Virus record (IMG/VR): IMGVR_UViG_3300050821_009835
Location: 200,913-264,912 of that record
Direction: 5' to 3' (one strand)
Length of the DNA: 64,000 nucleotides
The position numbers and the translations under genes were made by a program. Of this stretch, positions 35,931 to 58,314 are shown in pieces. How positions within the stretch are numbered: the stretch's first letter is position 1; the number at the start of each line of letters is the position of its first letter. Below the pieces are notes generated by a model, which saw nothing but the letters and a program-made list of their open reading frames with translations, ran no database searches and had not been told where the DNA came from.

Positions 35931-36017
35931 AAATTTTAATGGAGGCCAAATATGGCTGAAGAAAAGGAACAGCACGAGGAGTATCCGATGAACGGGCCTT
36001 GTTGCTAGAGGAATTTT

Positions 36018-36099: not shown

Positions 36100-36104
36100 A
36101 GTTT

Positions 36105-36177: not shown

Positions 36178-36215
36178 CTTTCGTGACTTTCTTTAAGAAA
36201 GGTTCATGACGAATT

Positions 36216-36395: not shown

Positions 36396-36399
36396 GTTT

Positions 36400-36485
36400 G
36401 CTGGTATCGCATAGTGGCCGATTGCAGCAGTTTTGTAAACTGCCGGAGAAATCCCACGGGGGTCCAAATCCCTCTGCCAGCTCCA
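36400..36485 (+). tRNA. trnT: tRNA-Thr(UGU), long variable arm, atypical T-loop, CCA encoded
   Basis: Acceptor GCTGGTA/TGCCAGC; arm GCAGT-TTTGTAA-ACTGC; variable CGGAGAAATCCCAC; T-loop TCCAAAT. Confidence 0.85.
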
Positions 36486-36492
36486 AAATTTT

Positions 36493-36579
36493 AGGGCGGT
36501 CGGGTAATGGCATCCCACCTGACTTTGAATCAGACGAGCCTTCGGCTCATTGTAGGTTCGAATCCTACCCGCCCTGCCA
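36493..36579 (+). tRNA. trnQ: tRNA-Gln(UUG), long variable arm, CCA encoded
   Basis: Acceptor AGGGCGG/CCGCCCT, G73; loop CTTTGAA; variable CGAGCCTTCGGCTCATT; T-arm GTAGG-TTCGAAT-CCTAC. Confidence 0.85.
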
Positions 36580-37602: not shown

Positions 37603-38394
37603 TTGCCAGTATTAGATTCTATGATTCAAAAAGCTACAGCCAAAGGTATGCGCCCGTATCAAGAAGATACTTCATTCATTTGTACTCATCCTCACGGCGA
37701 TCTTTTCGGTGTGTTTGACGGTCATGGTGGTCTAAATTGTTCTACATATCTTAGTGAACATTTTCCAGAAGCGTTCATTACACATTACGAAGAAGTCTAT
37801 GGTGATGCATACGAGGATTCTGTCGATGAGAAAGAAGTTTCTTTTTACAAATTTCTATCAAAAGCTGCTATGCGCAAAGCGTTTTATCAAATGGCAGATG
37901 AAACCAAACAGATGAGAAATGGTTCAACGGCCTCTGTGATTTGGGTGTTTCGTAAATTAAATTTTGCTGTTTGTGCGGTAATTGGCGATTCTCCTATTAT
38001 TGTTGGGACTGGTAAAAGGAGCTATCACTTAGGGCCGGATCACAATGCACGTTCCAACACAAAAGAGCGGGAAGCGGCTGAGAAACGTGGGGCATTTTGG
38101 GACGGTTATTATCTGTGCCATAGTTGGCATGGGGGCGGACTTCAAATGAGCCGCGCTTTGGGGGATTGTTCTCTACCGTTTCTTAGTCGTGTACCTCAAA
38201 TCTATACTCAAAAGGTGCACGATTTTGTGTTAGTTGGAACGGATGGTATTCTAGACCCAGGGCATAAGAGTCATGATATGGTGCCGGGTATGGTAAAGGC
38301 AGTTCGTGAAGGAGCTACTGCGAATCAAATCGTCGCGACAGCACTCGCAGTTCCCACCGGGGACAACGCCACTTGTCTGATTTGGAGACCATAA
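37603..38394 (+). CDS. PP2C/PPM-family Ser/Thr protein phosphatase
   Basis: RPYQED, FGVFDGHGG, GSTA, IGDS, MSRALGD, GTDG, DNAT. Confidence 0.9.
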   Translation: MPVLDSMIQKATAKGMRPYQEDTSFICTHPHGDLFGVFDGHGGLNCSTYLSEHFPEAFITHYEEVYGDAYEDSVDEKEVSFYKFLSKAAMRKAFYQMADETKQMRNGSTASVIWVFRKLNFAVCAVIGDSPIIVGTGKRSYHLGPDHNARSNTKEREAAEKRGAFWDGYYLCHSWHGGGLQMSRALGDCSLPFLSRVPQIYTQKVHDFVLVGTDGILDPGHKSHDMVPGMVKAVREGATANQIVATALAVPTGDNATCLIWRP

Positions 38395-40502: not shown

Positions 40503-41474
40503 TTGAATAAGCCATCTTGGGGCGTAATCGTTGGCCGTTTTCAAGTGCACGAACTCCATGAAGGTCACATGGACTTATTCCGCGCCGTCATGGGACGCCA
40601 TAATCGTGTAATTGTTTTTGTGGGTAAGTCTCCGAATGGAATGACCAAACGTAACCCGCTAGATTTCGTTACTCGCAAGGCGATGATTCAAGCAAAGTTC
40701 CCTAATTTTACAGTTCTTCCTTTGATTGATTGTATGACAGACGAGGCGTGGTCTGATTCTCTGGACGCCAAAATCCGAGAGGTTGTTGACTATGGCGACG
40801 TTACTCTGTATGGGGGCCGTGACAGTTTCGTGCCTCATTACCACGGTGCCTATCCTCCTGTTGAACTCGCTTTGCCTACCACGGAGCACATCAAAGGCGA
40901 AGACATTCGGGCAAAGTTGACAAATACGATCATCGAGTCCGCTGATTTTCGCGCTGGCGCTATTTACTCCGCGATGAATCAGTGGCCCAAAGCCATTACT
41001 TGCGTGGATGTAGTCATGTATCACTACTCTTGGTCAGATGTGAATAAAAACAATGACGACATGGAGTTCCTTCTCTGCAAGAAATACGGTGAGCCTGGTT
41101 GGCGTTTCGTGGGTGGCCACACTAAACCGATAACTGAGACTTTTGAACAGGATGCCAAAGATGAAGCTAGGGAAGAAGTGGGCCAATATCTAACCAAAAT
41201 GGAGTATATTGGCAGCTGTTATGTTCCCGACTGGCGCTGGGCGGCTGAGCAGGATAAAGTCAAGACGCTCGTGTTCGCCTCCGAGACTATGACTCTATCC
41301 GCTGCAGCAAAGGACGACATTTCTGAAGCGAAATGGTTTTCTATTCGTGAACTGAAAGAGGGGCTCCTCAACCCGGTTCATCACCCGATATTAAAGCTCG
41401 TACAAGAAGGATTCAGAAAGGAATTCAAACTATATGCCGCGCCCATTTCAACCGCGTCCGTTGCACAAGACTGA
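40503..41474 (+). CDS. nadM: Bifunctional NMN adenylyltransferase / Nudix (ADP-ribose pyrophosphatase)
   Basis: VGRFQ...HEGH, RNPL, D..W, YGGRDSF; C-terminal GGH....ET...A..EAREEVG, DDI..AKWF. Confidence 0.9.
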   Translation: MNKPSWGVIVGRFQVHELHEGHMDLFRAVMGRHNRVIVFVGKSPNGMTKRNPLDFVTRKAMIQAKFPNFTVLPLIDCMTDEAWSDSLDAKIREVVDYGDVTLYGGRDSFVPHYHGAYPPVELALPTTEHIKGEDIRAKLTNTIIESADFRAGAIYSAMNQWPKAITCVDVVMYHYSWSDVNKNNDDMEFLLCKKYGEPGWRFVGGHTKPITETFEQDAKDEAREEVGQYLTKMEYIGSCYVPDWRWAAEQDKVKTLVFASETMTLSAAAKDDISEAKWFSIRELKEGLLNPVHHPILKLVQEGFRKEFKLYAAPISTASVAQD

Positions 41475-42864
41475 CAGCTATAAGGTTGGTCACTGGAGAT
41501 TCATTGTCCCGGGAACTACGGAGATGCTCTACTACTACGAAGCTCGTGGCGGCGAGTATCCATACACTGTACTATTTGATCTCCAAGGAAACATTCAACG
41601 CAACATCGAAGGTCGTTTCGCCACTCTAACTGATGTTGAGGAGGCAGAATTTAAGGCGGGTCTCCATTTTGGCACGGATCGTGCTTTCAATAAAGAGGGC
41701 TGGCGCCACGTCATCAACAAGCATGGCGGTCACCTACCTTTGGATATCCGCGCTGTGAAAGAAGGCATTCCTGTAGAAGTGAAGAACGTTATGTGGACAA
41801 TGAAGAACTCATGCCCTGATTGTGCTTGGGTTCCTGGTTGGACAGAAACAATTCTGGAGCATACCTGGTACGGCTCCGGCGTTGTCACCAAATCTCGGTA
41901 TTCCAAAGAAATGATTGCTGAATTTCTTTCGGGTACAGCAGATGATTTTTCTACTTTGCCTTTTCAGCTGCATGACTTCGGTGGTCGCGGCGTCACTTGT
42001 GATCTACAAATGGGCATCGGGGCAGCGGCTCATTTAGTCAATTTCCAAGGCACTGATACATTGCCTGGTCTAGACTACATTGAGCAGTTTTATGGGTTTG
42101 GAATCGAAAACGAAATGCCCGGCTTTTCTGTATTCGCTACAGAGCATTCTGTCACTACAATGTGGAAACGGGAGTATGAATCCCAGTTTGTAGAGAACGC
42201 TTTGAATGAGGTTCCGTCGGGAATTCTTTCTTTGGTTGGAGATAGCTATGATATCTTCAACTTCACGGCTAATATCATCGGCGGGACTTACCGCGAACGC
42301 ATTCGCAATCGAGATGGTAAGGTTGTTGTTCGCCCCGACTCAGGTGATTCAGTTGCAGTAACACTTCGAGTACTTGACATTTTGGCAGAGAAATTTGGCA
42401 TTCGTGAGAATGACAAAGGTTACAAGGTTCTCCCGCCCTGTGTAGGTGTGCTGTGGGGAGATGGCATTGATCACTATGGCATTCGAAAAATTTTGCAGGC
42501 CATGAAGGACGCCAAGTGGTCCGCATCTAACATTGTCTTCGGTATGGGCGGAGGGTTGCTTCAGAAGATTAACCGCGATACGCAGAAGGTTGCTATTAAA
42601 TGCTGTAATGCGGTAGTCAACGGCGGCCAAGTTGAGATTTGGAAAGACCCCGTTACTGACCCAGGTAAGGCTTCTAAGCGAGGACGCTTGGCACTTCTGG
42701 AAGATTCGAATGACCAATATCGCACGGTGCAATACAAGGATGAAAGGGCGGGTTGCCCATTTGATCTCCTTGAGCCAGTTTTTCTTAATGGTGAATTATT
42801 AAGATTTCAGAAGTTCCCGGAGATTCGTAAGCTGGCGGAGGTTGTTCTTCCTGTTTACGTATAG
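41434..42864 (+). CDS. nadV: Nicotinamide phosphoribosyltransferase
   Basis: TDSYKVGH, LHDFGGRG, HLVNFQGTD, ATEHS, SLVGDSYD, VRPDSGD, GDG, FGMGGGLLQKINRDT, SKRGRL. Confidence 0.95.
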   Translation: MPRPFQPRPLHKTDSYKVGHWRFIVPGTTEMLYYYEARGGEYPYTVLFDLQGNIQRNIEGRFATLTDVEEAEFKAGLHFGTDRAFNKEGWRHVINKHGGHLPLDIRAVKEGIPVEVKNVMWTMKNSCPDCAWVPGWTETILEHTWYGSGVVTKSRYSKEMIAEFLSGTADDFSTLPFQLHDFGGRGVTCDLQMGIGAAAHLVNFQGTDTLPGLDYIEQFYGFGIENEMPGFSVFATEHSVTTMWKREYESQFVENALNEVPSGILSLVGDSYDIFNFTANIIGGTYRERIRNRDGKVVVRPDSGDSVAVTLRVLDILAEKFGIRENDKGYKVLPPCVGVLWGDGIDHYGIRKILQAMKDAKWSASNIVFGMGGGLLQKINRDTQKVAIKCCNAVVNGGQVEIWKDPVTDPGKASKRGRLALLEDSNDQYRTVQYKDERAGCPFDLLEPVFLNGELLRFQKFPEIRKLAEVVLPVYV

Positions 42865-43125: not shown

Positions 43126-43569
43126 ATGCCCCCAATTTCTAACCCCAACGCTCGCCAAATCGGTGGTACCCATTACAATCAGGTCTCAATTCAACATTGG
43201 GACCTTGTTCTAACCAATCGCCTTCCTTATCTTGAAGCACAAGCCACCAAATATGTGACTCGTTGGAAAAAGAAGAATCAGGCTGTCGCCGATATCGATA
43301 AGTCGCAGCACTATCTAGAGAAGCTGATTGTTTCTATTCAAGAAGGCTTCTTGCCGATGCCCACTCCAGAGTTTACATCATGCGGGTCTCCTAGAGTGCC
43401 ATTGACAAACCTGGATGAATTCGCTTCTCAAAACAAGATCGGCGATGTTGAAAAGACAATCTTCTACCTTCTCTTGACTTACACTACAATGGATGAACTT
43501 GAAAGGATACGCATACTTCTTGCTCATCTCATGATAGAGGCAAAAGAATTTGAAGCATCTCTGGTATGA
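43126..43569 (+). CDS. DUF3310-like protein
   Basis: QIGGTHY....QHWD...YLE..ATKYVTRWKKKN...DIDK..HYL. Confidence 0.75.
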   Translation: MPPISNPNARQIGGTHYNQVSIQHWDLVLTNRLPYLEAQATKYVTRWKKKNQAVADIDKSQHYLEKLIVSIQEGFLPMPTPEFTSCGSPRVPLTNLDEFASQNKIGDVEKTIFYLLLTYTTMDELERIRILLAHLMIEAKEFEASLV

Positions 43570-44288: not shown

Positions 44289-44888
44289 ATGAGTGTCATC
44301 TATGGTTTTCGCGGCGCAAATGGTTCTGGTAAATCGACTCTTGTCCGTCAACTCATGAAGCATATTGGCGTTGTAGCTGATCTTACAGAGCCCTCCGGTA
44401 AGGTCTGGGGGTACGAACTCCAGAACAACATCCGTGTCTTGGGTCGATATGAAACTCAATGCGGCGGTGTGGATGCCATAAAAGAAGTTCGTGTACCCGG
44501 TCAGTCCGGATTTGTAAACACTCGAAAGGGAATTACACTCCTTGCCTCTCTAGGGCATGTCATTTTTGAAGGAGTGCTATGGTCAACCGTTTTCAAGAGT
44601 AGCGACCTCATCGCTCGGGCGCTCCCTCAACATCATTTTATCTTTGCCATGCTAGATACCCCGGCTGAAGTTTGCATTGAACGAGTGCGGGCAAGACGGT
44701 TGGAAAAAGGCAATCATAAACCCTTCAACCCACGAGAGCTATTGTCGAAGGTGGAACAGATCCGAAGACGACAAGAAGATTTGAAGAAAGCTGGGTATGA
44801 TACTCGGACGATACCGTATCAGTCGGCTTTATCTACGGTATGCGGTTGGCTTGCTGAGGAAGGTGTGTTAATCCAACCGCCAGTTTGA
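44289..44888 (+). CDS. P-loop nucleotide kinase
   Basis: RGANGSGKST, LGRY...CGGVD, IFEG, LDTP.EVC.ERV..RR lid. Confidence 0.75.
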   Translation: MSVIYGFRGANGSGKSTLVRQLMKHIGVVADLTEPSGKVWGYELQNNIRVLGRYETQCGGVDAIKEVRVPGQSGFVNTRKGITLLASLGHVIFEGVLWSTVFKSSDLIARALPQHHFIFAMLDTPAEVCIERVRARRLEKGNHKPFNPRELLSKVEQIRRRQEDLKKAGYDTRTIPYQSALSTVCGWLAEEGVLIQPPV

Positions 44889-45460
44889 GACGGAAGTAGG
44901 TTTGTGCTTTCCCAAGATTTTACAACCTTCAGCGCCCAATTGATAAGCTGCTCATGCCCTTCGTCGTTTCCTTTGATTTCCAAGTTGAAAGGCTTACCAA
45001 TTATTTCTCGAATCTTTGGTTCTAAGGCAGCTGCCTGCTCTTCTGTTTCTCGACGTTCTCCAGCGCGATAGGCATGTGCGCGCTGGATAAAGACGTTGTA
45101 AGTACCATGGCCATTCAAATGGTAATAGGTTGCGCAATTTTCTAGAAGTGCTTGTAATTCTTTATGGTAGGGAAGATGCTCAGAGTACAGAGAACCCTGC
45201 TGAAAAGGGCATTCTGCGATTGCAATATCAACCCTAAATCGTTCAAGCCGTTTCACACGCTCGAATTGCAAAGCACTAATAAGAAACTGATTGTCATCCA
45301 GTTGACAGGTGGATTGACTGTACATGTGCTCTCGAGCTTGTTCCCCAACTAATTCAACATGGTAGTGAGCTTTTTTAAAAGCAAGGAAAAGGGCTGCGGC
45401 GGCAGTTGTTTTCCCACCTCCCGGTGGAGACCACAAGTTAAAAAGTAGCATGAAACCCAA
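44819..45460 (-). CDS. NadR-C/AAA_28-like P-loop kinase or ATPase
   Basis: NLWSPPGGGKTT, ELVGEQARE, ECP, R..ETEEQA. Confidence 0.65.
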   Translation of the reverse strand: MGFMLLFNLWSPPGGGKTTAAAALFLAFKKAHYHVELVGEQAREHMYSQSTCQLDDNQFLISALQFERVKRLERFRVDIAIAECPFQQGSLYSEHLPYHKELQALLENCATYYHLNGHGTYNVFIQRAHAYRAGERRETEEQAAALEPKIREIIGKPFNLEIKGNDEGHEQLINWALKVVKSWESTNLLPSQTGGWINTPSSASQPHTVDKAD

Positions 45461-45491: not shown

Positions 45492-46418
45492 ATGGTAACT
45501 CTTACTAATGGGAAGACCCTCCAAGCGGGGGATCTTGATATCTGCGTTCGAGGTGCAGACGGATCCATGATCGATCCCGCAGCGATTACTTACAGCATCT
45601 TCCAAATTGATAAGCAGATTCCCGTTCGCCCCACTCTAGCATACTCTTACGACCAGATGCAGCCGGACAAACTATCATCGCATTCGGTAAACCCTGAATC
45701 CACATTGGTTTACGGGCCAATGCAAGTTCCCACTCGCTCTTCGCAGGGATGTTACTATGTTCCTATCACTGTCCCAACAACATGGCATGGTGTCTTTCGT
45801 CTTGTCTGGTATCTGACGCAGTATGCAGGTGGTCAGCAGAACATGGTTCATGAAGAATTCGCGGTTGAAAATGTTGACCCAACTTCCATGAGTTTTGAGG
45901 CTCCCTCCGTCCAGATGGCAAAGGCTCCGCGCACTACTCACAAATACACGAAAGCGATTATGTATGTGCGGGAACTACTTTCAGATGATAACCCGGATCG
46001 AAACTATCACTTTCGTCCCCCAACTCCGAGTAAGGTGGTTGCGGGTTATACGACTCGTGTGGGGTATATCTGGACGGATCAGACGATTATTCGTATGTTG
46101 GAGATGTCGATACAGGACTTGAATACGTGGAATCCAATGAACTTAACAGCCTACACGTTGGATACTCTTCCTTTAAATTGGAGTTCAGCAGCGGCAACAG
46201 GTGCAGCGGCGAAGTGTTTGAATCGGGAAGGCGCTCGTTGGGCGGCGGATGAATTCAGTTTTTCGTTGAACGGTGTCAGTTTGGATATCAATAAGGCTGC
46301 ACTCTATCAGGGAATGGGTGCTCAGTACCGGGCAGAATTTTCAGAAATGGCCCCGTTAGTCACAGCTAACCGCCCTGGATCCGTGGGTTTACGTCAGCAA
46401 CGCTGGCTTTTGGGATGA
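45492..46418 (+). CDS. Putative neck / head-tail adaptor protein
   Basis: Ig-like N-terminus, then YVRELLSD.NPDRNY.F..P...GYIW.D; FSFSLNGVSLDI; structural gene context. Confidence 0.6.
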   Translation: MVTLTNGKTLQAGDLDICVRGADGSMIDPAAITYSIFQIDKQIPVRPTLAYSYDQMQPDKLSSHSVNPESTLVYGPMQVPTRSSQGCYYVPITVPTTWHGVFRLVWYLTQYAGGQQNMVHEEFAVENVDPTSMSFEAPSVQMAKAPRTTHKYTKAIMYVRELLSDDNPDRNYHFRPPTPSKVVAGYTTRVGYIWTDQTIIRMLEMSIQDLNTWNPMNLTAYTLDTLPLNWSSAAATGAAAKCLNREGARWAADEFSFSLNGVSLDINKAALYQGMGAQYRAEFSEMAPLVTANRPGSVGLRQQRWLLG

Positions 46419-46513: not shown

Positions 46514-48541
46514 ATGGACAAAATTCAACGGAAACAGCTTTTCTTAGAATATGCTTCCGATTCAAAAACCTGGTACGCAAAAGTACCTACTCTAGAGCCC
46601 TGTGAACTAGGTTGTGGAAGACGAGCCGCCTTTCTCCTTAAAAACTCTTGGCTCTTCTGTTGCCAAAATTCAGCCAAGCGATGCCTCAATCCTCTGCTCA
46701 CATCCAACCTTATCTGTTATGGATGTGGGCAGTCAGCTTCTTTGTTGCAAACCTGCGGACCTGTCTGTGGGAAACTCCCAACAGGAATCCGTTGCCCCGT
46801 CGCTGCAGAAGAAAACAAACTACGCAGGAAATCCTCCGCAAAACAGCATTTTCAGGATCCTGTATTTGCCACCCAACGTCAGAAAAGGTTTGTTGCTACC
46901 ATGATGAGTCGCCACGGCGCTCCGTCTGCTATGGCTTCTCCGGAACTCCGTAAGAAGATTTCTGCAACGATCCAAGAAAAGTACGGTGCGGATTGGGCAC
47001 CTAGCATCCCTGGTGTTTTCGATGCGGCTCGTCAACGTTGCCAAGACGAACATGGAGTGGATCATTGGACTAAACTAGACTCTACGAAACAAGCTCGAGC
47101 TGCAACTTGCCTAAAACAATATGGATTCTCCAATCCTGTAAAGTCCCCCATCGTGTTGAACAAACGCAGACAGAATTGGCGCAATAAATATGGGGCAGAT
47201 CACCCTCAGCAGATTAAGGCAATCACTGATCGTCGATACAAAACGTGGTTGAAAAATCAAGGCGGTTTAGTCTTTGGAAGTCCAACTTGGTGGAACAAAT
47301 ACCAGCCTTCCTACCAACAACGTACAGGATTTGCTCATCCCACTCAAGATCCTGAACGCATTAGAAAATGGATGAAGACCTTCTATCCCAGTTGTTTCCG
47401 TACTAAAGAAATGGTTCTTCCTTCAGGGAACACCATCCAGTTCCAAGGGTATGAGGACAAAGCCATCAACCATTTGCTAAAGAGTTATCGTGAGAATGGC
47501 CTGCTCTGGGGAGATGAGATCCCGCAAATTACCTATGTTAAACCTGACGGGGAGCCGGGATTGTATTTCCCTGATCTTTGTCTCGAACACGAGAAGATTC
47601 TCATAGAAGTTAAATCCACTTATACCTTGATGGAGGAGATACAACGAGGATTGCTCAGGGCCAAGTTCCAGGGAGCGTTAAAAGCAGGCTGGAATCCTCG
47701 AGTAGAAGTCTGGTCCGAGAGGGAAGATTTTCCCGTGGAGATTGACGCTAACCTGATTTGTCAGGATGACGGATTTGAGTCGTTCTCTTCCTTCATTTTA
47801 GAGTTGTGGCCAGAAGCCAAAATTTCTTTCTACGAAATAGAAGTCCCGGACATCGGCGCTATTGACTACCGCGTCCTGTACCAATTCATGAGTGGGGTGA
47901 AAAAGAAATTCAAAACTCCCCATTTTGTCGTGTTTGAAGATGAGTGGAAAACAAGACCCAATATCGTAAAAAACTTCTTGTTTTCCCTTGTTAAGTCGAA
48001 ACGACAGGGAAGTCGTATCGTACCTCAATTCCTTACTCATGGTCGCCTACTCCCTGAGCACAAAATATTCCTGCAAGAGCAGCACTACCTAGGAGCAGTA
48101 AAAACGGGAGGATTGGTGATTTCCGCCATCTGGGAAGGGAAGATTGTGGGCCTTTGGGTGTTCAAGAAGCGAAATTCTGAAACTGCGGAGTGGACTCGAG
48201 CTTGCTGGGACCACAACTTTAAGGCTTGGCAACCTCATGGTGAAGCTCTCCAGATAGCCAAGGAGAAGTTAGCGCAGCAAGGAATAAAGGAGATGGTGAG
48301 TTTCTCTGACAACCGATATCATTCAGGAAAACTCTACGAGGCTTTGGGATTTTCTAAAACAGGTGAATTACCTCCGGATTACATGTACACCGACGGGCAC
48401 GAACGCCAGCACAAATTCCGTTTTCGGGTTCCCGCAGGCGTCCCTGAGGAAGAATTCGCCGCCCGCAAAGGCTGGTACAGAATTCAAGACCTAGGGAAAT
48501 TGAGATTCGGTCTAGAAACGTCGTCACCTCCAAGCAAGTAA
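46514..48541 (+). CDS. Multidomain Hef-like homing endonuclease (repeats + PD-(D/E)XK + GNAT-like)
   Basis: CxCG/CxGC motifs; (K/R)YG..(H/N)P repeats; YFPDL...ILIEVKS; FLQEQHYLG...VSFSDNRY..GKLYEALGF...PDYMY. Confidence 0.7.
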   Translation: MDKIQRKQLFLEYASDSKTWYAKVPTLEPCELGCGRRAAFLLKNSWLFCCQNSAKRCLNPLLTSNLICYGCGQSASLLQTCGPVCGKLPTGIRCPVAAEENKLRRKSSAKQHFQDPVFATQRQKRFVATMMSRHGAPSAMASPELRKKISATIQEKYGADWAPSIPGVFDAARQRCQDEHGVDHWTKLDSTKQARAATCLKQYGFSNPVKSPIVLNKRRQNWRNKYGADHPQQIKAITDRRYKTWLKNQGGLVFGSPTWWNKYQPSYQQRTGFAHPTQDPERIRKWMKTFYPSCFRTKEMVLPSGNTIQFQGYEDKAINHLLKSYRENGLLWGDEIPQITYVKPDGEPGLYFPDLCLEHEKILIEVKSTYTLMEEIQRGLLRAKFQGALKAGWNPRVEVWSEREDFPVEIDANLICQDDGFESFSSFILELWPEAKISFYEIEVPDIGAIDYRVLYQFMSGVKKKFKTPHFVVFEDEWKTRPNIVKNFLFSLVKSKRQGSRIVPQFLTHGRLLPEHKIFLQEQHYLGAVKTGGLVISAIWEGKIVGLWVFKKRNSETAEWTRACWDHNFKAWQPHGEALQIAKEKLAQQGIKEMVSFSDNRYHSGKLYEALGFSKTGELPPDYMYTDGHERQHKFRFRVPAGVPEEEFAARKGWYRIQDLGKLRFGLETSSPPSK

Positions 48542-48606
48542 GGCGATTAAGACCATACCTATCAATGCGATACTCTCGAGTATGAGTCTTTCTGTCTTGT
48601 AAGTCA

Positions 48607-49965
48607 TTAGTTGAATTCGACCAGATAGCGGATATTCGCTTGCGACGTACGATAGACAATTTGCTCGTCGTTGATTACGCCAGAGCGACCCGGCTTGGCC
48701 CAGCAAGAATCATAACCGAGGCGTTTGCCGTTGCCGCTACCGCTCGGGATGTACTCCTTGCCCATCGCCACGTCAACCATGAACATGTAGCAGTTCTTGT
48801 CACGCGACCCGCCGTCCCAGTAGCCGTATGCATAATTTAAACTTTTTGTGCTCATCGCGGAGAAGTAGAGACCAGTCCCATACATCGCCCCTGTGGTTTG
48901 AACCGTGCTCAATTCGGTGGGCAAAACAAATCCACGTTTCAAAATCGAAAGCACATTGAACATGCGAGTGCCATGCCACAAAGATTTGATGTTACCAACC
49001 TTCTTACCGTCAGCATTAAAGGCCGCTTCCATGTGCGGGATGCGAACTTCGTATACACGAACCGGGCGAAGATGTGAGCACTCGTGACGTCCTTTGCTGT
49101 CGTAGTACATCCGCTCGATTTTGGAGATCACGTTGCGATCGTCGACCAGTTTCAATTCGCAGTTGAAAGTCTGAGCCAGTGGTTTCGCATTCACCTTGTT
49201 GACGTTGTTGATCGCGTCAGTCTGGCGCTGGTTGGCGATTTCGATAGAAGATTCTAACTGGTCTAGCAACTGAGTCTGCTTGTCCAATTGAATAAAATTC
49301 GTGTGCCATCCGCGCTTAAAGCCAACTTTCTGAGGAACATTACGAAGATAGTTGCCTAACAATTGCTGATAGGAGAGGTCTTCAGTTCGGCCCGATCTTA
49401 CATATGGGGCCATTTGATCCAGGTACTTACGAGCAGCTTTTACAGCTTCGATGGTCACAACGCCAAGAGCCGTGCGAACGATACCTGTTTCGAGGTCAAT
49501 GTCCAACTCGCCGCCTGATGCCACCAACAATTCATGACGGTTGGCTTTGGCCAATTTCTTCACTAAGGCAGATGTAATGGGGCATTTTCCACCGATTTCA
49601 GCAACCGCAACACGCTTCACTTCTTCTTTCGCCATCTGCTTGGGGGCGACGGAGCCTTGTGATCCACCAACGGTGGTGATTAACGTGTAGCTCGGGCCAT
49701 CCTTTTTGTTGGTTTTTTCACGAATCTTTGAAGCCAGGGTTTTCTCATTGAACATTTCTACTTTTGATTCGGGTTTATCCGCTCCCACACGGCCCCAAGT
49801 AAAGCGGATATCACCTGTCAGCATCTTGCCCTTGCTCATTTCGGATACAGGAGTGCTCAAGCGTTCGTACTTCCACCACTTGTTGTTATTATTTGCTGGA
49901 TCGACAGCGACATACATCTTTGTCTCGATGACTTTTACCTCGGGGGCTGTGGCCGTAGCTGTCAT
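48607..49965 (-). CDS. Poly(ADP-ribose) polymerase: WGR + regulatory helical + catalytic domains
   Basis: TWGRVG; LG.V...AV.AA...L...YLRNVP; LWHGT, GAMYGTGLYFS, KSLNY, DVAMG, YDS, NDEQIVY (H-Y-E triad). Confidence 0.92.
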   Translation of the reverse strand: MTATATAPEVKVIETKMYVAVDPANNNNKWWKYERLSTPVSEMSKGKMLTGDIRFTWGRVGADKPESKVEMFNEKTLASKIREKTNKKDGPSYTLITTVGGSQGSVAPKQMAKEEVKRVAVAEIGGKCPITSALVKKLAKANRHELLVASGGELDIDLETGIVRTALGVVTIEAVKAARKYLDQMAPYVRSGRTEDLSYQQLLGNYLRNVPQKVGFKRGWHTNFIQLDKQTQLLDQLESSIEIANQRQTDAINNVNKVNAKPLAQTFNCELKLVDDRNVISKIERMYYDSKGRHECSHLRPVRVYEVRIPHMEAAFNADGKKVGNIKSLWHGTRMFNVLSILKRGFVLPTELSTVQTTGAMYGTGLYFSAMSTKSLNYAYGYWDGGSRDKNCYMFMVDVAMGKEYIPSGSGNGKRLGYDSCWAKPGRSGVINDEQIVYRTSQANIRYLVEFN

Positions 49966-50023
49966 GTAATTATTCTACTGGATCTAAACGAAATTCAGCT
50001 AACTTTTCGATCCTTTATTAGCC

Positions 50024-51382
50024 ATGGTACAAAGTCTCCTCATTTTTAATAGCAGTTTTGTCGGAAGTCGGGATTTGTGGTGGGTGGACTCTCCTGATGC
50101 GATTAAGGGCTACAATGTGTATCGGTCCCACGATGCACCGAATCCTGCTCCAAATCAATTTTCCCCTTACGGGCCGCCCTCTCAGCTAGAGTTGGGGCAG
50201 GTACATTGGGAACTTTTAAACAAGACAGGCCCAATTCAAGGCCATTTCTATCGTGATATGACAACCTTGGAAACGGTTTCTTACACAGTCGGGCCAAATG
50301 AGTTTGTTGAGCAGCAGCAATTTGGGCGATTTGGCATTCATCTTCGGGGTATCCCCTATAGTGAAGTTGTCACTGGACGTCCCATGGTTGCCATTAGCCC
50401 AGACGATGTCACAGTTACTATTGACGGCGTTCCCCATCGTCCTGCTGAAGTACAGGGAATGGATCAAGCTGTATGGTTGAAGATGGATAACACGATCATT
50501 CCTGGTGGTCCAGATGTGGCATTAGCTGATGTGAGTAACGGCATTGTCTGGAAAGCAGATTATACGGGAACGGTGGGCTCGCCGCCTAAACTTCATGTAT
50601 TCCAAGTGACTTATCAGAAGCTGGTGAACTATGTAGATGTCTATACAAGTTTAACCCGTGCTTGGTATACCGTAGTTCCAGTAGGCGACAAGGGTGAATG
50701 CCATAAACCTGGTGCCCAGAATACTCAGGTTGTTAACACTCAACAGATTGAAAACCTGACATGGGAGTGGGCTGAAGCGGTCCGGCGTAATCAATGGGTC
50801 TTCGAAATGGAAGGTGAACCTGCTCGGATTCTGCTTCGTAAGAGTCGTGGGGAAATTTGCGGCTGCCGTGGAAGTGATACAGGCAATCAGCAACCTCGTA
50901 CAGCCTGCCCTATTTGTTATGAAACAGGATGGATTGGTGGTTATATCGGGCCGTATGATATCGTCTTTGTTCCACCGGATACAGCTCTAATTCGAGAATT
51001 GAACGAGGGTGGTGTTAAGGCTACGCGCACGTCGCGTTCCTATTTAACGGTCACCCCGATTGTTCAGTCTGGGGATATTGTTGTGCGTCGGAATGGAGAG
51101 CGTTTGGTTATTGGTAATGTAACCACAAAATCCACTCGTGGAATTATTTTACAACAAGAGTTTGATGTTGAGCTACGTCCTTTAAAAGATACAATTTATC
51201 TGATCCCTGTGGATCAACAACTGCCTGTAGTGTACAACCCGGTGGTTCAAAACAACCCAGTTCAGGGTATTGGGAATGGCGAGGGTGTTGTAGATCCCCG
51301 ACAAACTACCCCAGATAAACCATTAGAGAATCCGAATTTGGGGATTGGGAGAACACCGACTTGGGCAAAAATTCAAAACTGA
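50024..51382 (+). CDS. Putative head-tail joining / neck protein
   Basis: EGEPARILLRK..GEICGC...CPICYETGWIGGY...; VQSGDIVVRRNGER; structural context. Confidence 0.6.
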   Translation: MVQSLLIFNSSFVGSRDLWWVDSPDAIKGYNVYRSHDAPNPAPNQFSPYGPPSQLELGQVHWELLNKTGPIQGHFYRDMTTLETVSYTVGPNEFVEQQQFGRFGIHLRGIPYSEVVTGRPMVAISPDDVTVTIDGVPHRPAEVQGMDQAVWLKMDNTIIPGGPDVALADVSNGIVWKADYTGTVGSPPKLHVFQVTYQKLVNYVDVYTSLTRAWYTVVPVGDKGECHKPGAQNTQVVNTQQIENLTWEWAEAVRRNQWVFEMEGEPARILLRKSRGEICGCRGSDTGNQQPRTACPICYETGWIGGYIGPYDIVFVPPDTALIRELNEGGVKATRTSRSYLTVTPIVQSGDIVVRRNGERLVIGNVTTKSTRGIILQQEFDVELRPLKDTIYLIPVDQQLPVVYNPVVQNNPVQGIGNGEGVVDPRQTTPDKPLENPNLGIGRTPTWAKIQN

Positions 51383-51434
51383 CTCGATACATTACAGCAA
51401 AATCAACTACCACACGCAATTTAGAGAGGTAAAC

Positions 51435-51956
51435 ATGGCAAACGCAAAACAACTGGCCGATCTAGTCGTTAAAACAGCAGGAATTCTCTGTGTCGACGAC
51501 GCACCTGGAAGTAATCCTGATTTACAGGCGATAGTGGGTGATCCAGACGATAGCAGAACATCTCCCTTTGCTCAATTCAAACCCAACCCAGGAGGTACCC
51601 AAATACCTAACCCGTTATCGGCAGTTCAAGGTGACGAGATGTTCTTTGCCTATGCTATGACTCCTGGAGCAGTGTTTCAAGATCATTCAGGCCAGCAATG
51701 GATAGTGGAAAGCTATGGTTGGGATGGACAAGTAGAAATTTCTAACAGATGGTACCCGGCTATTCGCGCTCAAGTATCCATTGTAGATGTTCGTCGATCC
51801 ATAGATCAGGTTGTGGAGCCTGTTCAATTCACCGTTCCTCCGCCTCCTGCTGGTGTGGATTATGGCACTCTTTTGGTAAAGGAAAATAATAACAATGCCA
51901 CGACCATCGATGCTCATGCTGGTCAAGGAGTATCTTCTACGAGTGGTGGTTGGTAA
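51435..51956 (+). CDS. Hypothetical virion-associated protein
   Basis: GAGG RBS then MANAKQ (track start at 51345 is probably too early). Confidence 0.55.
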   Translation: MANAKQLADLVVKTAGILCVDDAPGSNPDLQAIVGDPDDSRTSPFAQFKPNPGGTQIPNPLSAVQGDEMFFAYAMTPGAVFQDHSGQQWIVESYGWDGQVEISNRWYPAIRAQVSIVDVRRSIDQVVEPVQFTVPPPPAGVDYGTLLVKENNNNATTIDAHAGQGVSSTSGGW

Positions 51957-52019
51957 AACTTCAAACTGCAGAAATAAGGGGGCGAGGGGCGTAAGTCCTT
52001 TGTTATCAATATCGTAGAC

Positions 52020-53726
52020 TTGACAGGCAGTTATCTTATTTCATATCTTTTACGTCAAATTAAGGACATTGTAGCACGGAGCCCTCGGTTTCGCAATGCT
52101 CTTGGCGATACTACTTTCCAAAATAATCAAATGATTCAATGGGGCAATGTTCAGGCAGTTATTAAAAATCTGTCTGCTTCAGGCACTCGTTTGTCTCCTG
52201 ATTATTACATGTGTACTCAACGAGGTCGCGTAACCGTTGCGAAAATGGGCGATTTTGAGGGTTCTTTTATTGAATGGCCACTTGAGTATGATAAAACTCG
52301 TCAAACCCCAATTTCTGGAGTTTATAACATTCAAATTGATGCTACTAATGAGAAGAATCAACAAATTGATCTCACTATGCAGCTATTCAAATGGACACAG
52401 GGTAATCTCAAGAATGCGCAGGGAAGTGTCGTTTATTTCAGCCCGACATTATCTGATACGGGCGAAAATATACCCGGACTGCCTCCTCAGTTCCCTCATT
52501 TGGACCTTACCACGTTGATTGCAACAGAAGCTGAAACTGGGAAATCTATTCAGATTCAAGCGTACAATTCTTCTGTAGGTGGATTTTTATACGTGTTAAC
52601 ACCATGTCAAACACTCGTGTTAACGCTGCCAAATGGGCAAACTTTAAACCAGAACGGCTCGGATTACTGGTATCAACGATCCAGTACAGTCATTATTTGT
52701 CAGTCTACAATCGGTGGCTCAGAACTACTGAATATTGATGTGCCTTTTGTTTCAGCTCAATTTCAAGATCAAAGTGGGTATGTTTTGCGACCCAACATTG
52801 ATTTTACTTGGCAGAAGGCTAATTGGATAGAACTATCTTCTTCTTCTCCAGCTGGAAGCACAATCTCCGCTGTTATTGTACAAAAAGTAGCACCTGCTGG
52901 AAATACAGCTACCAATCCAGAGAACATACTGAACATTGGGTATGTGCAGGGAACAGATTCCTTAATTCCAAGTCAGGTTAATATCTACACACCTGCAGGG
53001 ACCTTTACAGCCGTTCCGGTGAATACTGATGGGACTGTTACTCTTCCAACTTTGTTGACACCTGGTCAATGGTTGCGTTATGATATTCGCATTTCAACCC
53101 CACCTGTTACTATGCGTGGCAAGAAATATCAAATGAATGGTTTTGTAAAAACAATCGTAGACAGCACACTTTCAGCAGCCGAGCAAGCCGAGCCTTCAAA
53201 TAGAATTGTTTATTTGGATCCTGTCACTCGCCAAACTGTAGACCCATTACCCGGTTTGGCGGTAGCGATTGGGGATAGTGTTGTGGTTGGAGATCAATGC
53301 GCACTTGTAGTTAACCCGGAAATTACAGAAACGTATGAAATTTATGGGTCGAAAGATAATATTTCATTTACATTAGACACCAAAGCTAACGATCTCCAGA
53401 CAGCCTCCGATCTTGCAGAATTGATTAAGGCGCAGTTTCTCGTATTCAAGCGAGAGAACATGGAACGGGATGGTATAACCATTTTTGAGGCACCTCGTAA
53501 CATGACGAGCGTGCAGCGCGATATTTCAGGAATTAACCCAGAATACACGTTTTCTCAGGCGTTTACTGGTATGGCCGATTGGAAAGTCTACCGTCCGCTG
53601 GTTACTCGAATGGCATCGTTTGAGCTTACAGTTTCAGGGTACCTGCCAGATTTTCAGGGGAAACTGCAACTTCCTTCTCGTATACAATCGGCTGGGGCTG
53701 ATCAATTTCTCACTAGTTATGCCTGA
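52020..53726 (+). CDS. Putative tail terminator / completion protein with inserted beta domains
   Basis: C-terminal FTLDTKANDLQTASDLAELI...REN.E.DGI; upstream of the sheath. Confidence 0.5.
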   Translation: MTGSYLISYLLRQIKDIVARSPRFRNALGDTTFQNNQMIQWGNVQAVIKNLSASGTRLSPDYYMCTQRGRVTVAKMGDFEGSFIEWPLEYDKTRQTPISGVYNIQIDATNEKNQQIDLTMQLFKWTQGNLKNAQGSVVYFSPTLSDTGENIPGLPPQFPHLDLTTLIATEAETGKSIQIQAYNSSVGGFLYVLTPCQTLVLTLPNGQTLNQNGSDYWYQRSSTVIICQSTIGGSELLNIDVPFVSAQFQDQSGYVLRPNIDFTWQKANWIELSSSSPAGSTISAVIVQKVAPAGNTATNPENILNIGYVQGTDSLIPSQVNIYTPAGTFTAVPVNTDGTVTLPTLLTPGQWLRYDIRISTPPVTMRGKKYQMNGFVKTIVDSTLSAAEQAEPSNRIVYLDPVTRQTVDPLPGLAVAIGDSVVVGDQCALVVNPEITETYEIYGSKDNISFTLDTKANDLQTASDLAELIKAQFLVFKRENMERDGITIFEAPRNMTSVQRDISGINPEYTFSQAFTGMADWKVYRPLVTRMASFELTVSGYLPDFQGKLQLPSRIQSAGADQFLTSYA

Positions 53727-53744
53727 AGATTGGAAGAGTCGAAT

Positions 53745-54158
53745 ATGCGTTATGAATTTCGTTGTGAAAAATGCAAACTTGTAGTGGAACATCTTCAATC
53801 CATTAAGGATCCACTTCCTGATAAATTAAAATGCCCCCGGCCAGGATGTAATGGGCAATGCAGCCTTATTATTACTGCACCTATGATTTCTAAATCAGGG
53901 ATGACCCACGAACCCTTTGATATTGCGGTTGGGAGAGATGCAGAAGTGCGTTGGGCGGATATCCATCGTCGCCAGAATACGAGAAATAAAGTTCGTCAGG
54001 AAAGTGGAGAACAGGCTTTGGTTATGACTGGGCGAAACGAATTTCAACCAGTCAAGGGTGCAAAATTAACTCCTATAGCCATTGGTCCTGATATCCCAAA
54101 AGAATCTGGGCCAGAATCTAGAGGCACGAAAAAGATTCTTTCGGAGTTAGCTAGTTAG
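53745..54158 (+). CDS. FmdB-like zinc-ribbon protein
   Basis: MRYEFRCEKC.....HLQSI.D....KCP..GC. Confidence 0.75.
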   Translation: MRYEFRCEKCKLVVEHLQSIKDPLPDKLKCPRPGCNGQCSLIITAPMISKSGMTHEPFDIAVGRDAEVRWADIHRRQNTRNKVRQESGEQALVMTGRNEFQPVKGAKLTPIAIGPDIPKESGPESRGTKKILSELAS

Positions 54159-57870: not shown

Positions 57871-58314
57871 ATGTTAATTCACACAATCATCGGCCAGAAT
57901 CAAGGCATTATAAGCGTAACGGTCCAGTGTTCATTCAATGGGCAACCGTCGCCGCAACAAGATGCCATAGACAAATCCAAAATCTCTGCTTTTGGGGATC
58001 CTCCGATTAACATCGCGGGCAATTTTACTGACCCAAACAACAATCAATTCACTTTCCAATTCCCGACAACAGAATTGTGGGTTGGAGTAACAACCCAACT
58101 GTCATCACAAACAGCAAGATTTTATGTGGCGTTACCGGCAACAACAGTTCCCGGCCAATGTCCCCCAGTTCAGGGACCGTTGGATTGTATTACACCAAAT
58201 CCATCTGAAGCTGCGGATGCCTGGGTTGATGTAATTCAGTCGCGTATTTCGCAGGCTATGCTGGCATTACGATTGCAGATGTTGGTCCCGGTTATCCCCG
58301 ACGTATACGTTTAA
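57871..58314 (+). CDS. Hypothetical virion-associated protein
   Basis: AAGGA RBS, follows the sheath. Confidence 0.55.
   Translation: MLIHTIIGQNQGIISVTVQCSFNGQPSPQQDAIDKSKISAFGDPPINIAGNFTDPNNNQFTFQFPTTELWVGVTTQLSSQTARFYVALPATTVPGQCPPVQGPLDCITPNPSEAADAWVDVIQSRISQAMLALRLQMLVPVIPDVYV

What the first reader, a model, noticed from the sequence alone, without database searches (positions are those of the whole stretch)
48607..49965. Phage-encoded PARP with eukaryote-like WGR-regulatory-catalytic architecture and intact H-Y-E triad
Seen: TWGRVG (WGR), a helical segment matching the PARP regulatory domain (TALGVVTIEAVKAARKYL...NYLRNVP), and catalytic LWHGT, GAMYGTGLYFS, KSLNY and NDEQIVY. Known: this layout is that of PARP2/3 and the Herpetosiphon bacterial PARP, the catalytic Glu is needed for chain elongation, and WGR senses DNA breaks. 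Well-known phage ADP-ribosyltransferases (T4 Alt/ModA/ModB) are mono-ARTs of a different clade. Inference: a DNA-break-activated PAR writer used in repair, in host takeover, or to modify DNA or defence proteins. It sits antisense inside the morphogenesis block like an inserted module.
Basis: partly seen in the sequence, partly recalled or inferred. Interest (0 to 1): 0.8.

Follow-up and report, generated by a model that had tools for sequence, protein, structure and literature searches.

The report
Jumbo-phage PARP (WGR–helical–catalytic) gene
A soil jumbo phage carries an intact three-domain poly(ADP-ribose)-polymerase-type gene in a variable slot between tail/neck genes; the call is correct, but phage genes of this type are already annotated and catalogued, and none has been tested biochemically.

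Summary
ORF 48607-49965 (-) encodes a 452-aa protein with every quoted motif. It matches the Pfam PARP catalytic domain (E 2e-20). As a family profile it aligns end to end with the WGR-helical-catalytic chains of human PARP1/2 (E ~1e-31). Its AlphaFold model superposes on those chains (TM 0.62-0.65). H331 and Y367 are invariant and E434 is kept in every intact relative.

The genome is a ~340-kb soil jumbo myophage known only from metagenomes. The gene lies antisense, beside a homing-endonuclease-like gene, in a slot that one related phage fills with other small ORFs. It is therefore an accessory insert.

It is not new in kind. Klebsiella phage FBKp34's GenBank record names the same three domains. 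XacN1 and Xoo-sp13 carry annotated PARPs, PHROG 23333 covers the family, and three surveys (2014, 2021, 2022) list phage PARPs.

The nearest relatives are phage and bacterial (40-70% identity). Herpetosiphon PARP and human PARPs are about 20-25% identical.

DNA-break activation and polymer synthesis are inferred from homology only. The triad does not separate mono from poly (PARP3).

Verdict: new member of a known kind, modest interest. The main open point is that no experiment on any phage PARP was found.

The parts
48607..49965 (-). PARP gene, 452 aa plus stop codon. The N-terminus is conserved in relatives, so the ATG at 49965 is the likely start.
49678..49932 (-). WGR domain, residues ~12-96. 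N26, N28, K29 and G58 are invariant, N27 and R59 nearly so, and W57 is W/Y/F across the family. It carries a 12-residue insertion specific to this subclade.
   Evidence: Pfam WGR 19.2 bits, sub-threshold. The profile aligns to the PARP1/PARP2 WGR domain. 35/47 relatives hit PF05406. Residue counts are; pLDDT is 87-92.
49201..49629 (-). Helical (PARP regulatory/HD-like) domain, residues ~113-255, with six predicted helices.
   Evidence: phmmer and profile alignments to the PARP1/2/3 helical domain. 25/47 relatives hit PF02877. Secondary structure.
48610..49164 (-). ART (PARP catalytic) domain, residues ~268-452.
   Evidence: PF00644 E 2.2e-20. Foldseek TM (target-normalised) 0.58-0.72 to PARP1/2/3/4 catalytic domains.
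48973..48975 (-). Codon of H331, the triad His in LWHGT. G332 follows it.
   Evidence: 47/47 conserved; aligned to the HaPARP His
48865..48867 (-). Codon of Y367, the triad Tyr in GLYFS. K374, S375 and Y378 of the nicotinamide pocket motif follow at 48832-48846.
   Evidence: 47/47 conserved
48664..48666 (-). Codon of E434, the catalytic Glu in NDEQIVY.
   Evidence: 46/47; the only exception is a truncated duplicate copy
46514..48541 (+). Neighbour in the same variable slot: a 675-aa protein with a Cys-rich N-terminus, DUF7487 and a homing-endonuclease-like C-terminus. It converges on the PARP gene.
   Evidence: absent from the syntenic locus L006
45492..46418 (+). Conserved left flank of the slot. 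There is only a weak lead to a head-completion/adaptor protein.
   Evidence: 46% identical homologue in L006; atlas leads
50024..51382 (+). Conserved right flank of the slot, divergent from PARP across a 58-bp spacer. There is only a weak lead to a neck protein.
   Evidence: 40% identical homologue in L006, followed by the same gene order up to the tail sheath; atlas leads
40503..42864 (+). NAD+ salvage pair 5.7 kb upstream: a NadM-like NMN adenylyltransferase/Nudix fusion and NadV. This is a possible substrate supply for PARP; the link is inferred.

Best explanation
This is an intact accessory gene of an uncultured soil jumbo myophage (~340 kb). It encodes a bacterial/phage-type three-domain PARP: an N-terminal WGR nucleic-acid-break sensor, a helical autoinhibitory domain, and a C-terminal diphtheria-toxin-like ART domain with the H331-Y367-E434 triad.

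The likely mechanism follows PARP1/2/3 and Herpetosiphon PARP. WGR binds a DNA (or RNA) end or nick. This loosens the helical domain and opens the NAD+ site. The enzyme then transfers ADP-ribose from NAD+ to itself and to nearby proteins or nucleic-acid ends, probably as short or long chains, and releases nicotinamide. The phage's own NadV/NadM pair can recycle that nicotinamide to NAD+.

Shown here: identity, domain order, conserved catalytic residues, purifying conservation, phage origin, and placement in a variable slot.

Inferred: catalysis, break dependence, chain length, targets, and biological role (phage DNA break handling or host takeover).
For: Domains: PF00644, E 2e-20; profile E ~1e-31 across WGR, HD and CAT of PARP1/2; 47/47, 35/47 and 25/47 relatives hit the three Pfam domains. 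The AlphaFold model has pLDDT 79, and its top Foldseek hits are PARP1/PARP2 WGR-CAT chains on DNA breaks, TM 0.62-0.65.

Residues: H331, G332, Y367, K374 and Y378 are 47/47. E434 is 46/47. N26, N28, K29 and G58 are 47/47, and R59 is 46/47.

Loop length: the short segment before the catalytic Glu is shared with Herpetosiphon PARP. That enzyme makes PAR in a DNA-dependent way (papers read).

Family: it is large and conserved, with 491 90%-identity clusters and 640 50%-identity clusters at E<=1e-30.

Phage context.

Variable slot.

Links to break repair and reversibility in relatives: a PARP-185aa-LigA operon in Gemmobacter and an ADP-ribosylglycohydrolase 3.2 kb from the PARP of a 64%-identical phage relative.

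NAD+ salvage nearby.
Against: There is no biochemical evidence for this or any phage PARP in the searched literature. H-Y-E does not prove polymer synthesis, since PARP3 is a mono-ART. On the single sequence, WGR is below Pfam's cutoff and PARP_reg is not detected. No eraser (macro, PARG or ARH) was found in the 64-kb window. No functional partner is conserved beside the gene across phage loci. NadV is so common in phages (1,772 records) that its presence is not specific support. No recognisable Shine-Dalgarno or promoter signal precedes the gene. A soil metatranscriptome shows fragments of the neighbours but none of PARP; this is weak, because a gap in contig data proves nothing. The pocket geometry of the model was not measured.
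Confidence: 0.65

Rival explanations
1. The fold and sensor are the same, but the enzyme is a mono-ADP-ribosyltransferase like PARP3. It would tag itself or one or a few host or phage proteins with single ADP-ribose units rather than writing polymers.
For: PARP3 shares the architecture and the H-Y-E triad yet is a mono-ART, and it is the best single-sequence PDB hit (E 2.5e-14). The position corresponding to PARP1's Tyr two residues before the catalytic Glu (my recollection of PARP1 numbering) is Asn (N432, 46/47). No PAR-specific eraser (PARG) was seen. The only eraser near a relative is ARH/DraG type.
Against: The profile scores slightly better to PARP1/2 than to PARP3 (1e-31 against 5e-25). 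Herpetosiphon PARP has the same short loop and makes PAR. E434 is conserved in every intact relative examined.
Confidence: 0.25
2. The main substrate is nucleic acid rather than protein. The enzyme would ADP-ribosylate terminal phosphates at DNA or RNA breaks. That could protect or mark phage DNA ends, or act within an RNA/DNA end-repair pathway.
For: The papers listed include reviews noting that nucleic acids can be substrates of reversible ADP-ribosylation (PMC8385414; PMC8883491). That PARP1-3 themselves do this in vitro is my own recollection, not something read here. The window is rich in end-joining enzymes: an ATP-dependent DNA ligase at 5525-6331 and RNA ligases at 6873-7940 and 31525-32688. 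In L090 the PARP lies ~900 bp downstream of a T4 Rnl1-type RNA ligase. In Gemmobacter it is in an operon with LigA.
Against: The linkage to ligases is not conserved. Nothing in the sequence separates protein from nucleic-acid acceptors.
Confidence: 0.12
3. A host-takeover or counter-defence enzyme. It would modify host RNA polymerase, nucleoid or defence proteins, or deliberately drain or redirect NAD+. DNA breaks from host-genome degradation would serve as the trigger.
For: Iyer et al. propose that phage PARPs act like T4 ARTs but with chains. In cultured and metagenomic phages the gene usually sits in arrays of small co-directional genes that look like early or accessory genes. The phage carries its own NAD+ salvage pathway.
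Against: No target is known and expression timing is unknown. In this window the gene is not in an early-gene array. NadV/NadM are explained well enough as counter-defence on their own.
Confidence: 0.2
4. Functionless cargo: a recently acquired or decaying gene carried with the adjacent homing-endonuclease-like gene.
For: It sits in a variable slot next to a homing-endonuclease-like gene. It has no SD motif. No transcript fragments were seen.
Against: The ORF is full length with all catalytic and sensor residues intact. There are hundreds of conserved relatives at 44-70% identity that keep the same invariant positions. The DUF7487 gene does not accompany PARP in the other loci examined.
Confidence: 0.03

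Closest known systems
Annotated PARPs of cultured jumbo and large phages: Klebsiella phage vB_KpM_FBKp34 QQV91759.1, Xanthomonas phages XacN1 BBA65562.1 and Xoo-sp13, Stenotrophomonas phages RAS14/CM1, Klebsiella 05F01/KP13-16; PHROG 23333
   Same: They match over the full length (97-98% coverage) with the same ~420-450 aa three-domain layout. FBKp34's record explicitly lists the WGR, regulatory and catalytic domains. All are phage accessory genes.
   Different: They are only 31-35% identical and branch in other parts of the tree: XacN1/RAS14 with actinobacterial PARPs, FBKp34 alone. Their gene context differs, being co-directional arrays of small genes. None has been characterised experimentally.
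Bacterial PARPs closest in sequence: Gemmobacter caeni, Paracoccus sp. ME4 plasmid, Variovorax sp. WDL1, and Blastocatellia/Armatimonadota MAGs
   Same: 39-42% identity over the whole length, with the same architecture and triad. They are the nearest named neighbours in the tree.
   Different: They are cellular or plasmid-borne. Gemmobacter's gene is in an operon with a 185-aa protein and an NAD+-dependent DNA ligase. That operon is absent from the phage loci.
Herpetosiphon aurantiacus PARP (HaPARP) and Clostridioides difficile CD160 PARP, the two biochemically tested bacterial PARPs
   Same: WGR-helical-catalytic order, H-Y-E triad, and a short segment before the catalytic Glu. Per the papers read, both make PAR in vitro, HaPARP is DNA-dependent, and both are reversed by PARG.
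   Different: Identity to HaPARP is only ~24-25% overall and it lies in the opposite major clade of the tree. CdPARP was not retrieved here. The window shows no PARG.
Human PARP1 (WGR-HD-CAT part), PARP2 and PARP3
   Same: Fold and domain order match: Foldseek TM 0.62-0.65 to DNA-bound PARP1/2 chains and a profile E of ~1e-31. The NNNK[FYW][YW] and [WYF]GR motifs of WGR, and the HG, Y, KS..Y and E motifs of the NAD+ site, are shared.
   Different: Identity is about 18-21%. There are no zinc fingers, no BRCT and no N-terminal tail. The loop before the catalytic Glu is ~25-30 residues shorter than in PARP1. It is not a recent eukaryotic acquisition.
T4 Alt / ModA / ModB
   Same: They are phage-encoded and use NAD+ to ADP-ribosylate macromolecules.
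   Different: They belong to the R-S-E clade, are mono-ARTs (ModB also RNAylates), and have no WGR or helical domain. No sequence match was seen here.

Membership tests
PARP catalytic domain (Pfam PF00644; H-Y-E ARTD clade) | Significant match to the family model above its curated cutoff | tested here: met
   73.5 bits against a cutoff of 26.7, E 2.2e-20, residues 282-404. 47/47 relatives also hit.
PARP catalytic domain (Pfam PF00644; H-Y-E ARTD clade) | His-Tyr-Glu triad at the aligned positions of the NAD+ site | tested here: met
   H331, Y367 and E434 align to the triad of PARP1/2/3 and HaPARP. They are conserved 47/47, 47/47 and 46/47.
PARP catalytic domain (Pfam PF00644; H-Y-E ARTD clade) | ART fold with the triad lining the NAD+ pocket | tested here: inconclusive
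   The fold matches PARP1/2/3/4 catalytic domains, TM (target-normalised) 0.58-0.72, with pLDDT 81-94 around the triad.
PARP catalytic domain (Pfam PF00644; H-Y-E ARTD clade) | NAD+-dependent ADP-ribosyl transfer; polymer versus monomer product | not testable with these tools
   This needs an enzyme assay. The triad alone does not decide poly versus mono (PARP3).
WGR domain (PF05406) | Match to the Pfam model above the gathering score on this sequence alone | tested here: not met
   19.2 bits against 22, E 0.0013, residues 20-88.
WGR domain (PF05406) | Homology by family profile, by relatives and by fold, with the [WYF]-G-R motif | tested here: met
   The profile aligns positions 12-60 to the PARP1/PARP2 WGR domain within a full-length hit of E ~1e-31. 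35/47 relatives hit PF05406, best E 9e-15. W57, G58 and R59 are present. The beta-rich N-terminal domain has pLDDT 87-92, and full-length Foldseek hits go to WGR-containing chains.
PARP regulatory / helical domain (PF02877) | Match to the Pfam model on this sequence alone | tested here: not met
   No PF02877 hit even at E<=1.
PARP regulatory / helical domain (PF02877) | Helical domain between WGR and ART that is homologous to the PARP1-3 HD | tested here: met
   phmmer and profile alignments to PARP1/2/3 start at query residues ~114-166, inside the helical domain. 25/47 relatives hit PF02877. Six helices are predicted across residues 113-255.
DNA-dependent PARPs (PARP1/2/3, HaPARP type) | Activation of catalysis by DNA breaks through WGR and HD | not testable with these tools
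   Inferred from architecture only. The reference behaviour comes from the papers read.
Complete reversible PAR system (writer plus PARG/macro/ARH eraser) | An eraser gene in the same genome | tested here: inconclusive
   No eraser was found in the 64-kb window, but only about a fifth of the genome is visible. An ARH-type gene lies 3.2 kb from the PARP in relative L092 and is missing at the same place in another relative.
T4 Alt/ModA/ModB-type phage ARTs (R-S-E clade) | R-S-E motif and Alt/Mod family match | tested here: not met
   Only PARP and WGR were hit in Pfam, and PHROG 23333/18612 in PHROGs. The active site is H-Y-E.

The most novel reading that the evidence does not exclude
The gene may be the writer of a phage-run, self-supplied ADP-ribosylation circuit. 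In this reading a break-sensing PARP is fed by the phage's own NadV/NadM salvage pathway and, in some relatives, reset by a phage ARH-type hydrolase. It would flag breaks in phage DNA made by restriction, CRISPR or the many homing endonucleases of these genomes, and couple them to phage ligases. That would be a viral analogue of the eukaryotic PARP-ligase repair axis. A wider version is that abundant soil jumbo phages are the vehicles that move three-domain PARPs between bacterial phyla.
Probability: 0.1. Interest if true: 0.7.

Novelty: new member of a known kind. Interest (0 to 1): 0.3.

Why it matters
Phage PARPs have been listed in surveys since 2014, but the searches here found no paper that tests one. 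This report shows three things. The three-domain type forms a large, conserved family: 640 clusters at 50% identity with E<=1e-30. One well-supported clade of that family sits on soil contigs of up to ~450 kb. The gene moves between variable genome slots and between phages and bacteria. That makes the family a reasonable target for asking what break-sensing ADP-ribosylation does in a prokaryotic virus. It also bears on how PARPs spread among bacteria. As a single locus it adds no new architecture or mechanism.

Tried and rejected
- Megablast of 20 kb around the gene against 50,697 phage records found no match, so no close cultured relative exists.
- NCBIfam has no model that hits the PARP.
- The promoter/terminator scan of 48300-50300 found no more sites than shuffled sequence. 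The convergent spacer 48530-48620 folds no better than shuffles, z 0.63. No regulatory element is claimed.
- I tested NadV co-occurrence as a specific link to PARP and rejected it, because NadV is in 1,772 phage records.
- I looked for the Gemmobacter 185-aa partner and LigA next to PARP elsewhere. The partner recurs only in the Paracoccus plasmid. The only other ligase match is in the planctomycete locus L061, so neither is a general partner.
- I looked for the L092 ARH homologue in the window, in all fetched loci and in IMG/VR, and found none. The IMG/VR scan reaches only close relatives.
- The L004 tandem PARP pair is a 99.9%-identical 2.3-kb repeat that truncates copy 1. It is a recent duplication or an assembly artefact, not evidence of paralogue divergence.
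- Eukaryotic PARPs were not put in the tree, because no tool supplied their full sequences as usable references. The direction of transfer and any 'eukaryote-like' origin are therefore untested, and the tree is midpoint-rooted only.
- PADLOC was not searched.
- The read-laying result is contig-level, so the absence of PARP fragments in RNA is not counted as evidence of silence.
Full report
OBSERVATION. A 452-aa ORF with an ATG start occupies 48607-49965 on the minus strand, as reported.
- NNNNKWW at residues 25-31
- TWGRVG at 56-61
- TALGVVTIEAVKAARKYL at 165-182
- NYLRNVP at 205-211
- LWHGT at 329-333
- GAMYGTGLYFS at 359-369
- KSLNY at 374-378
- NDEQIVY at 432-438

The N-terminus is conserved in relatives, so the start codon is credible.

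DOMAINS. On the single sequence, Pfam gives a clear PARP catalytic hit: PF00644, 73.5 bits against a cutoff of 26.7, E 2.2e-20. The WGR hit is sub-threshold (19.2 against 22 bits) and PARP_reg gets no hit. The other two domains are nevertheless real, for four reasons:
- phmmer against PDB aligns residues ~150-406 to the helical plus catalytic fragments of PARP3, PARP1 and PARP2, E 2.5e-14 to ~1e-13.
- A profile of 47 relatives (A1) aligns positions 12-438 in one stretch to the WGR-HD-CAT chain of PARP1 (4dqy_C), and positions 12-389 plus a short C-terminal stretch to PARP2, at E ~1e-31. PARP2's 'NNNKYY ... WGRVG' lies on the family's 'NNNKFW ... [WY]GRVG'.
- Scanned one by one, 47/47 relatives hit PF00644, 35/47 hit PF05406 and 25/47 hit PF02877.
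- An AlphaFold2 model built on A1 (mean pLDDT 79, pTM 0.62) shows a beta-rich N-terminal domain, a six-helix middle domain and an ART domain. Its best PDB matches are the WGR-containing chains of PARP1 and PARP2 bound to DNA double-strand breaks, TM 0.61-0.65 for all but the top-ranked hit (7aeo_A, 0.43). Isolated catalytic fragments follow at TM (target-normalised) 0.58-0.72.

CATALYTIC AND SENSOR RESIDUES. In A1 the following are conserved in 47/47 sequences: H331, G332, Y367, K374 and Y378. S375 is S or A. E434 is 46/47, and the one exception is a truncated duplicate. In WGR, N26, N28, K29, G58, K84 and Y93 are invariant, R59 is 46/47, and position 57 is W, Y or F. H, Y and E align with the triad of Herpetosiphon aurantiacus PARP (locus L089) and of PARP1/2/3.

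The segment between the 'AMG' strand and the catalytic Glu is about 25-30 residues shorter than in PARP1. The same short form is found in HaPARP, which makes PAR in a DNA-dependent way according to the papers read. So the short form does not argue against polymerase activity. Pocket geometry could not be measured because model coordinates are not exposed.

WHAT GENOME THIS IS. The protein is recorded on contigs of 265 and 340 kb from soil metagenomes, and the 265-kb contig is in IMG/VR. The window encodes the following:
- a portal-like protein, a tail-sheath-like protein, and a DNA polymerase; a 238-aa ORF at 13968-14684 has weak primase similarity
- an ATP-dependent DNA ligase and two or three RNA ligases
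- a Lon-like protease, a UvrD helicase and a PP2C phosphatase
- a 5-hmdU-kinase-like protein
- several homing endonucleases
- five tRNAs

No cultured phage is similar at the DNA level. This is an uncultured jumbo myophage. Shine-Dalgarno motifs precede 26 of 42 genes against a background of 0.11, so the host uses them. The PARP gene has none.

IS IT AN INSERT? The gene runs opposite to its neighbours. One other minus-strand gene, 44819-45460, is called nearby. The PARP gene converges on a 675-aa gene with DUF7487 and a homing-endonuclease-like C-terminus at 46514-48541.

A related IMG/VR contig (L006) keeps homologues of 45492-46418 and of 50024-51382, 51345-51956, 52020-53726, 53730-54158, the tail sheath and 57871-58314, all in the same order. 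Between the first two it holds ~4.9 kb of small ORFs, with no PARP and no DUF7487. So the slot is variable and PARP is an accessory insert. This rests on one comparison.

The flanks give only weak leads to adaptor/head-completion and neck proteins. The only firm morphogenesis call nearby is the tail-sheath hit, E 2.6e-19.

In other relatives the PARP sits elsewhere:
- among small co-directional genes (L002; the P0010 contig; XacN1, RAS14, FBKp34)
- near a UvrD helicase, a Nudix gene and thymidine-hypermodification genes (L003)
- ~900 bp after a T4 Rnl1-type RNA ligase (L090)
- in what looks like a cellular or mobile-element context (L091)

No partner is conserved across phage loci.

RELATIVES AND PHYLOGENY. 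The word-indexed search found 491 clusters at 90% identity with E<=1e-5. The top ones are 60-71% identical, and many lie on 250-450 kb contigs. The exhaustive profile search found 5,613 representatives at E<=1e-3, 2,930 at 1e-10 and 640 at 1e-30. Most of the 150 listed are full-length proteins of about 420-460 aa.

The genome scan found bacterial homologues at up to 40-42% identity:
- Gemmobacter caeni
- a Paracoccus plasmid
- Variovorax
- Blastocatellia, Armatimonadota and Gemmataceae MAGs

Herpetosiphon homologues are about 24-25% identical.

I built a 75-row maximum-likelihood tree (quick search, SH-aLRT support, midpoint root). It shows:
- The window lies in a starred 14-row clade of metagenomic sequences, which sits inside a starred 23-row metagenomic clade.
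- Next to that clade are further metagenomic rows and the Proteobacterial PARPs.
- XacN1 and RAS14 group with actinobacterial PARPs.
- FBKp34 sits alone on a long branch.
- The Herpetosiphon, Bacillus and Chthonomonadaceae sequences form the opposite major clade.

The labelled phage sequences therefore do not form one group, which suggests repeated exchange with bacteria. Direction cannot be inferred without a root. Eukaryotic sequences were not included.

WHAT IS ALREADY KNOWN.
- tblastn finds annotated 'poly (ADP-ribose) polymerase' genes in Xoo-sp13, XacN1 and FBKp34, and in Cellulophaga phages (catalytic part only).
- FBKp34's record states 'contains WGR domain; Poly(ADP-ribose) polymerase, regulatory domain; and catalytic domain'.
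- PHROG 23333 matches at 9e-49.
- BFVD holds viral models with the full fold, the best at TM 0.78-0.84 and 32% identity.
- Perina et al. 2014 list PARPs in Aeromonas phage Aeh1 and Cellulophaga phage phi4:1.
- Iyer et al. 2021 point to XacN1's BBA65562.1 and suggest it acts like the T4 ARTs but with chains.
- Iyer et al. 2022 count PART/PARP among the most frequent viral ART families.
- Bacterial three-domain PARPs are reviewed, and two are shown active in vitro.

Four literature searches found no experimental work on any phage PARP. The library covers open-access papers and bioRxiv only.

MECHANISM. By homology, the most likely mechanism runs as follows. WGR binds a nucleic-acid break. The helical domain releases autoinhibition. 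The ART domain then uses NAD+ to ADP-ribosylate itself and nearby acceptors, releasing nicotinamide. Every step of this mechanism is inferred.

Three observations fit a break-repair, reversible, NAD+-cycling reading, but none is general:
- In Gemmobacter caeni the PARP is followed, with overlapping stop and start codons, by a 185-aa gene and an NAD+-dependent DNA ligase with BRCT. The 185-aa partner recurs only on the Paracoccus plasmid.
- In L092 (64% identical PARP) an ADP-ribosylglycohydrolase (PF03747) lies 3.2 kb downstream in the same gene array. It is missing at the same place in another relative and has no homologue in the window.
- The window has NadV (494 bits against a cutoff of 405) and a NadM-like NMNAT/Nudix fusion 5.7 kb upstream. 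This pair could recycle the nicotinamide that PARP releases. However, NadV is in 1,772 phage records and is explained well enough as counter-defence.

Whether the product is polymer or monomer cannot be read from the sequence. PARP3 has the same architecture and triad and is a mono-ART.

EXPRESSION. A soil metatranscriptome holds near-identical fragments of 50159-52081 and of 48278-48435, but none of the PARP ORF. These are assembler contigs at low depth, so the gap is not evidence of silence. At most it hints that PARP is not co-expressed with its plus-strand neighbours. The promoter/terminator scan and the fold of the spacer gave nothing above shuffled controls.

VERDICT. The 'inserted module' reading is supported by one synteny comparison. 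The functional claims are reasonable homology inference, not findings.

The case is a new and fairly divergent member of a known, already annotated kind: 31-35% identity to cultured-phage PARPs, and part of a large soil jumbo-phage clade. Interest is modest at 0.3. Its value lies in flagging an abundant family that has not been tested experimentally, not in a new architecture.

Noticed in passing
window 40503-42864 (+): NAD+ salvage pair. The first gene is a NadM-like NMN adenylyltransferase with a C-terminal Nudix domain; its N-terminal hits are far below curated cutoffs. It overlaps NadV by 41 nt, and NadV scores 494 bits, above the equivalog cutoff. This is the known phage NAD+ reconstitution pathway.
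   Followed up: partly
window 35854-36579 (+): Cluster of five tRNA genes: Ile-GAT, Thr-CGT, Thr-GGT, Thr-TGT and Gln-TTG. Three of them are unusually long (82-87 nt) for these isotypes.
   Followed up: no
window 43126-43569 and 44289-44888 (+); L003 15074-16951: A 5-hmdU DNA kinase-like gene and DUF3310 lie in the window, and ADDT/aGPT-Pplase genes occur in relatives. This suggests the phage lineage hypermodifies thymidine in its DNA.
   Followed up: no
window 46514-48541 (+): A 675-aa protein with a Cys-rich N-terminus, DUF7487 (two stretches) and a C-terminus matching homing-endonuclease PHROGs 3339/559. It shares the variable slot with PARP. Another assembly calls the same gene as 546 aa.
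   Followed up: partly
window 6873-7940 (+): RNA ligase (phrog_24030, E 3e-118) whose residues ~30-85 also match HNH endonuclease families. There is a second RNA ligase (DRB0094 type) at 31525-32688 and an ATP-dependent DNA ligase fragment-like gene at 5525-6331.
   Followed up: no
window 21781-22530 (+), 61174-61938 (-): Further homing-endonuclease-like genes, the second of GIY-YIG type. Together with the DUF7487 gene, that makes at least three in 64 kb.
   Followed up: no
L004 4900-10000: A 2.34-kb tandem repeat, 99.9% identical, carries three small genes plus PARP. The junction replaces the C-terminus of copy 1, which loses its catalytic Glu. This is either a very recent duplication or an assembly artefact near the contig end.
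   Followed up: yes
L010 6013-9931 (Gemmobacter caeni): Apparent operon with overlapping stop and start codons: PARP, a 185-aa unknown protein, and an NAD+-dependent DNA ligase with BRCT. The 185-aa protein recurs after the PARP on a Paracoccus plasmid (L011 7296-7877).
   Followed up: partly
L092 1-17365: The jumbo-phage relative carries an ADP-ribosylglycohydrolase (12596-13870) 3.2 kb after its PARP. It also has an amino-acid permease immediately upstream, tRNA-synthetase-like fragments, an R2K ATP-grasp protein and an M24 peptidase.
   Followed up: partly
window 51404-51959 (+): This is the strongest and longest metatranscriptome fragment in the region (556 nt, word depth 8.4). It covers most of the ORF at 51345-51956, a protein with no family match, possibly an abundant late protein.
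   Followed up: no
window 46514, 49965, 50024, 52020, 53730 (gene starts): Five consecutive genes, including PARP, lack a Shine-Dalgarno-like motif, although 26 of 42 genes in the window have one. Some of the mechanical start codons may be wrong.
   Followed up: partly
window 37603-38394 (+), 11668-12840 (+): A PP2C-type protein phosphatase and a Lon-like ATP-dependent protease domain protein. These are regulatory enzymes uncommon in small phages.
   Followed up: no
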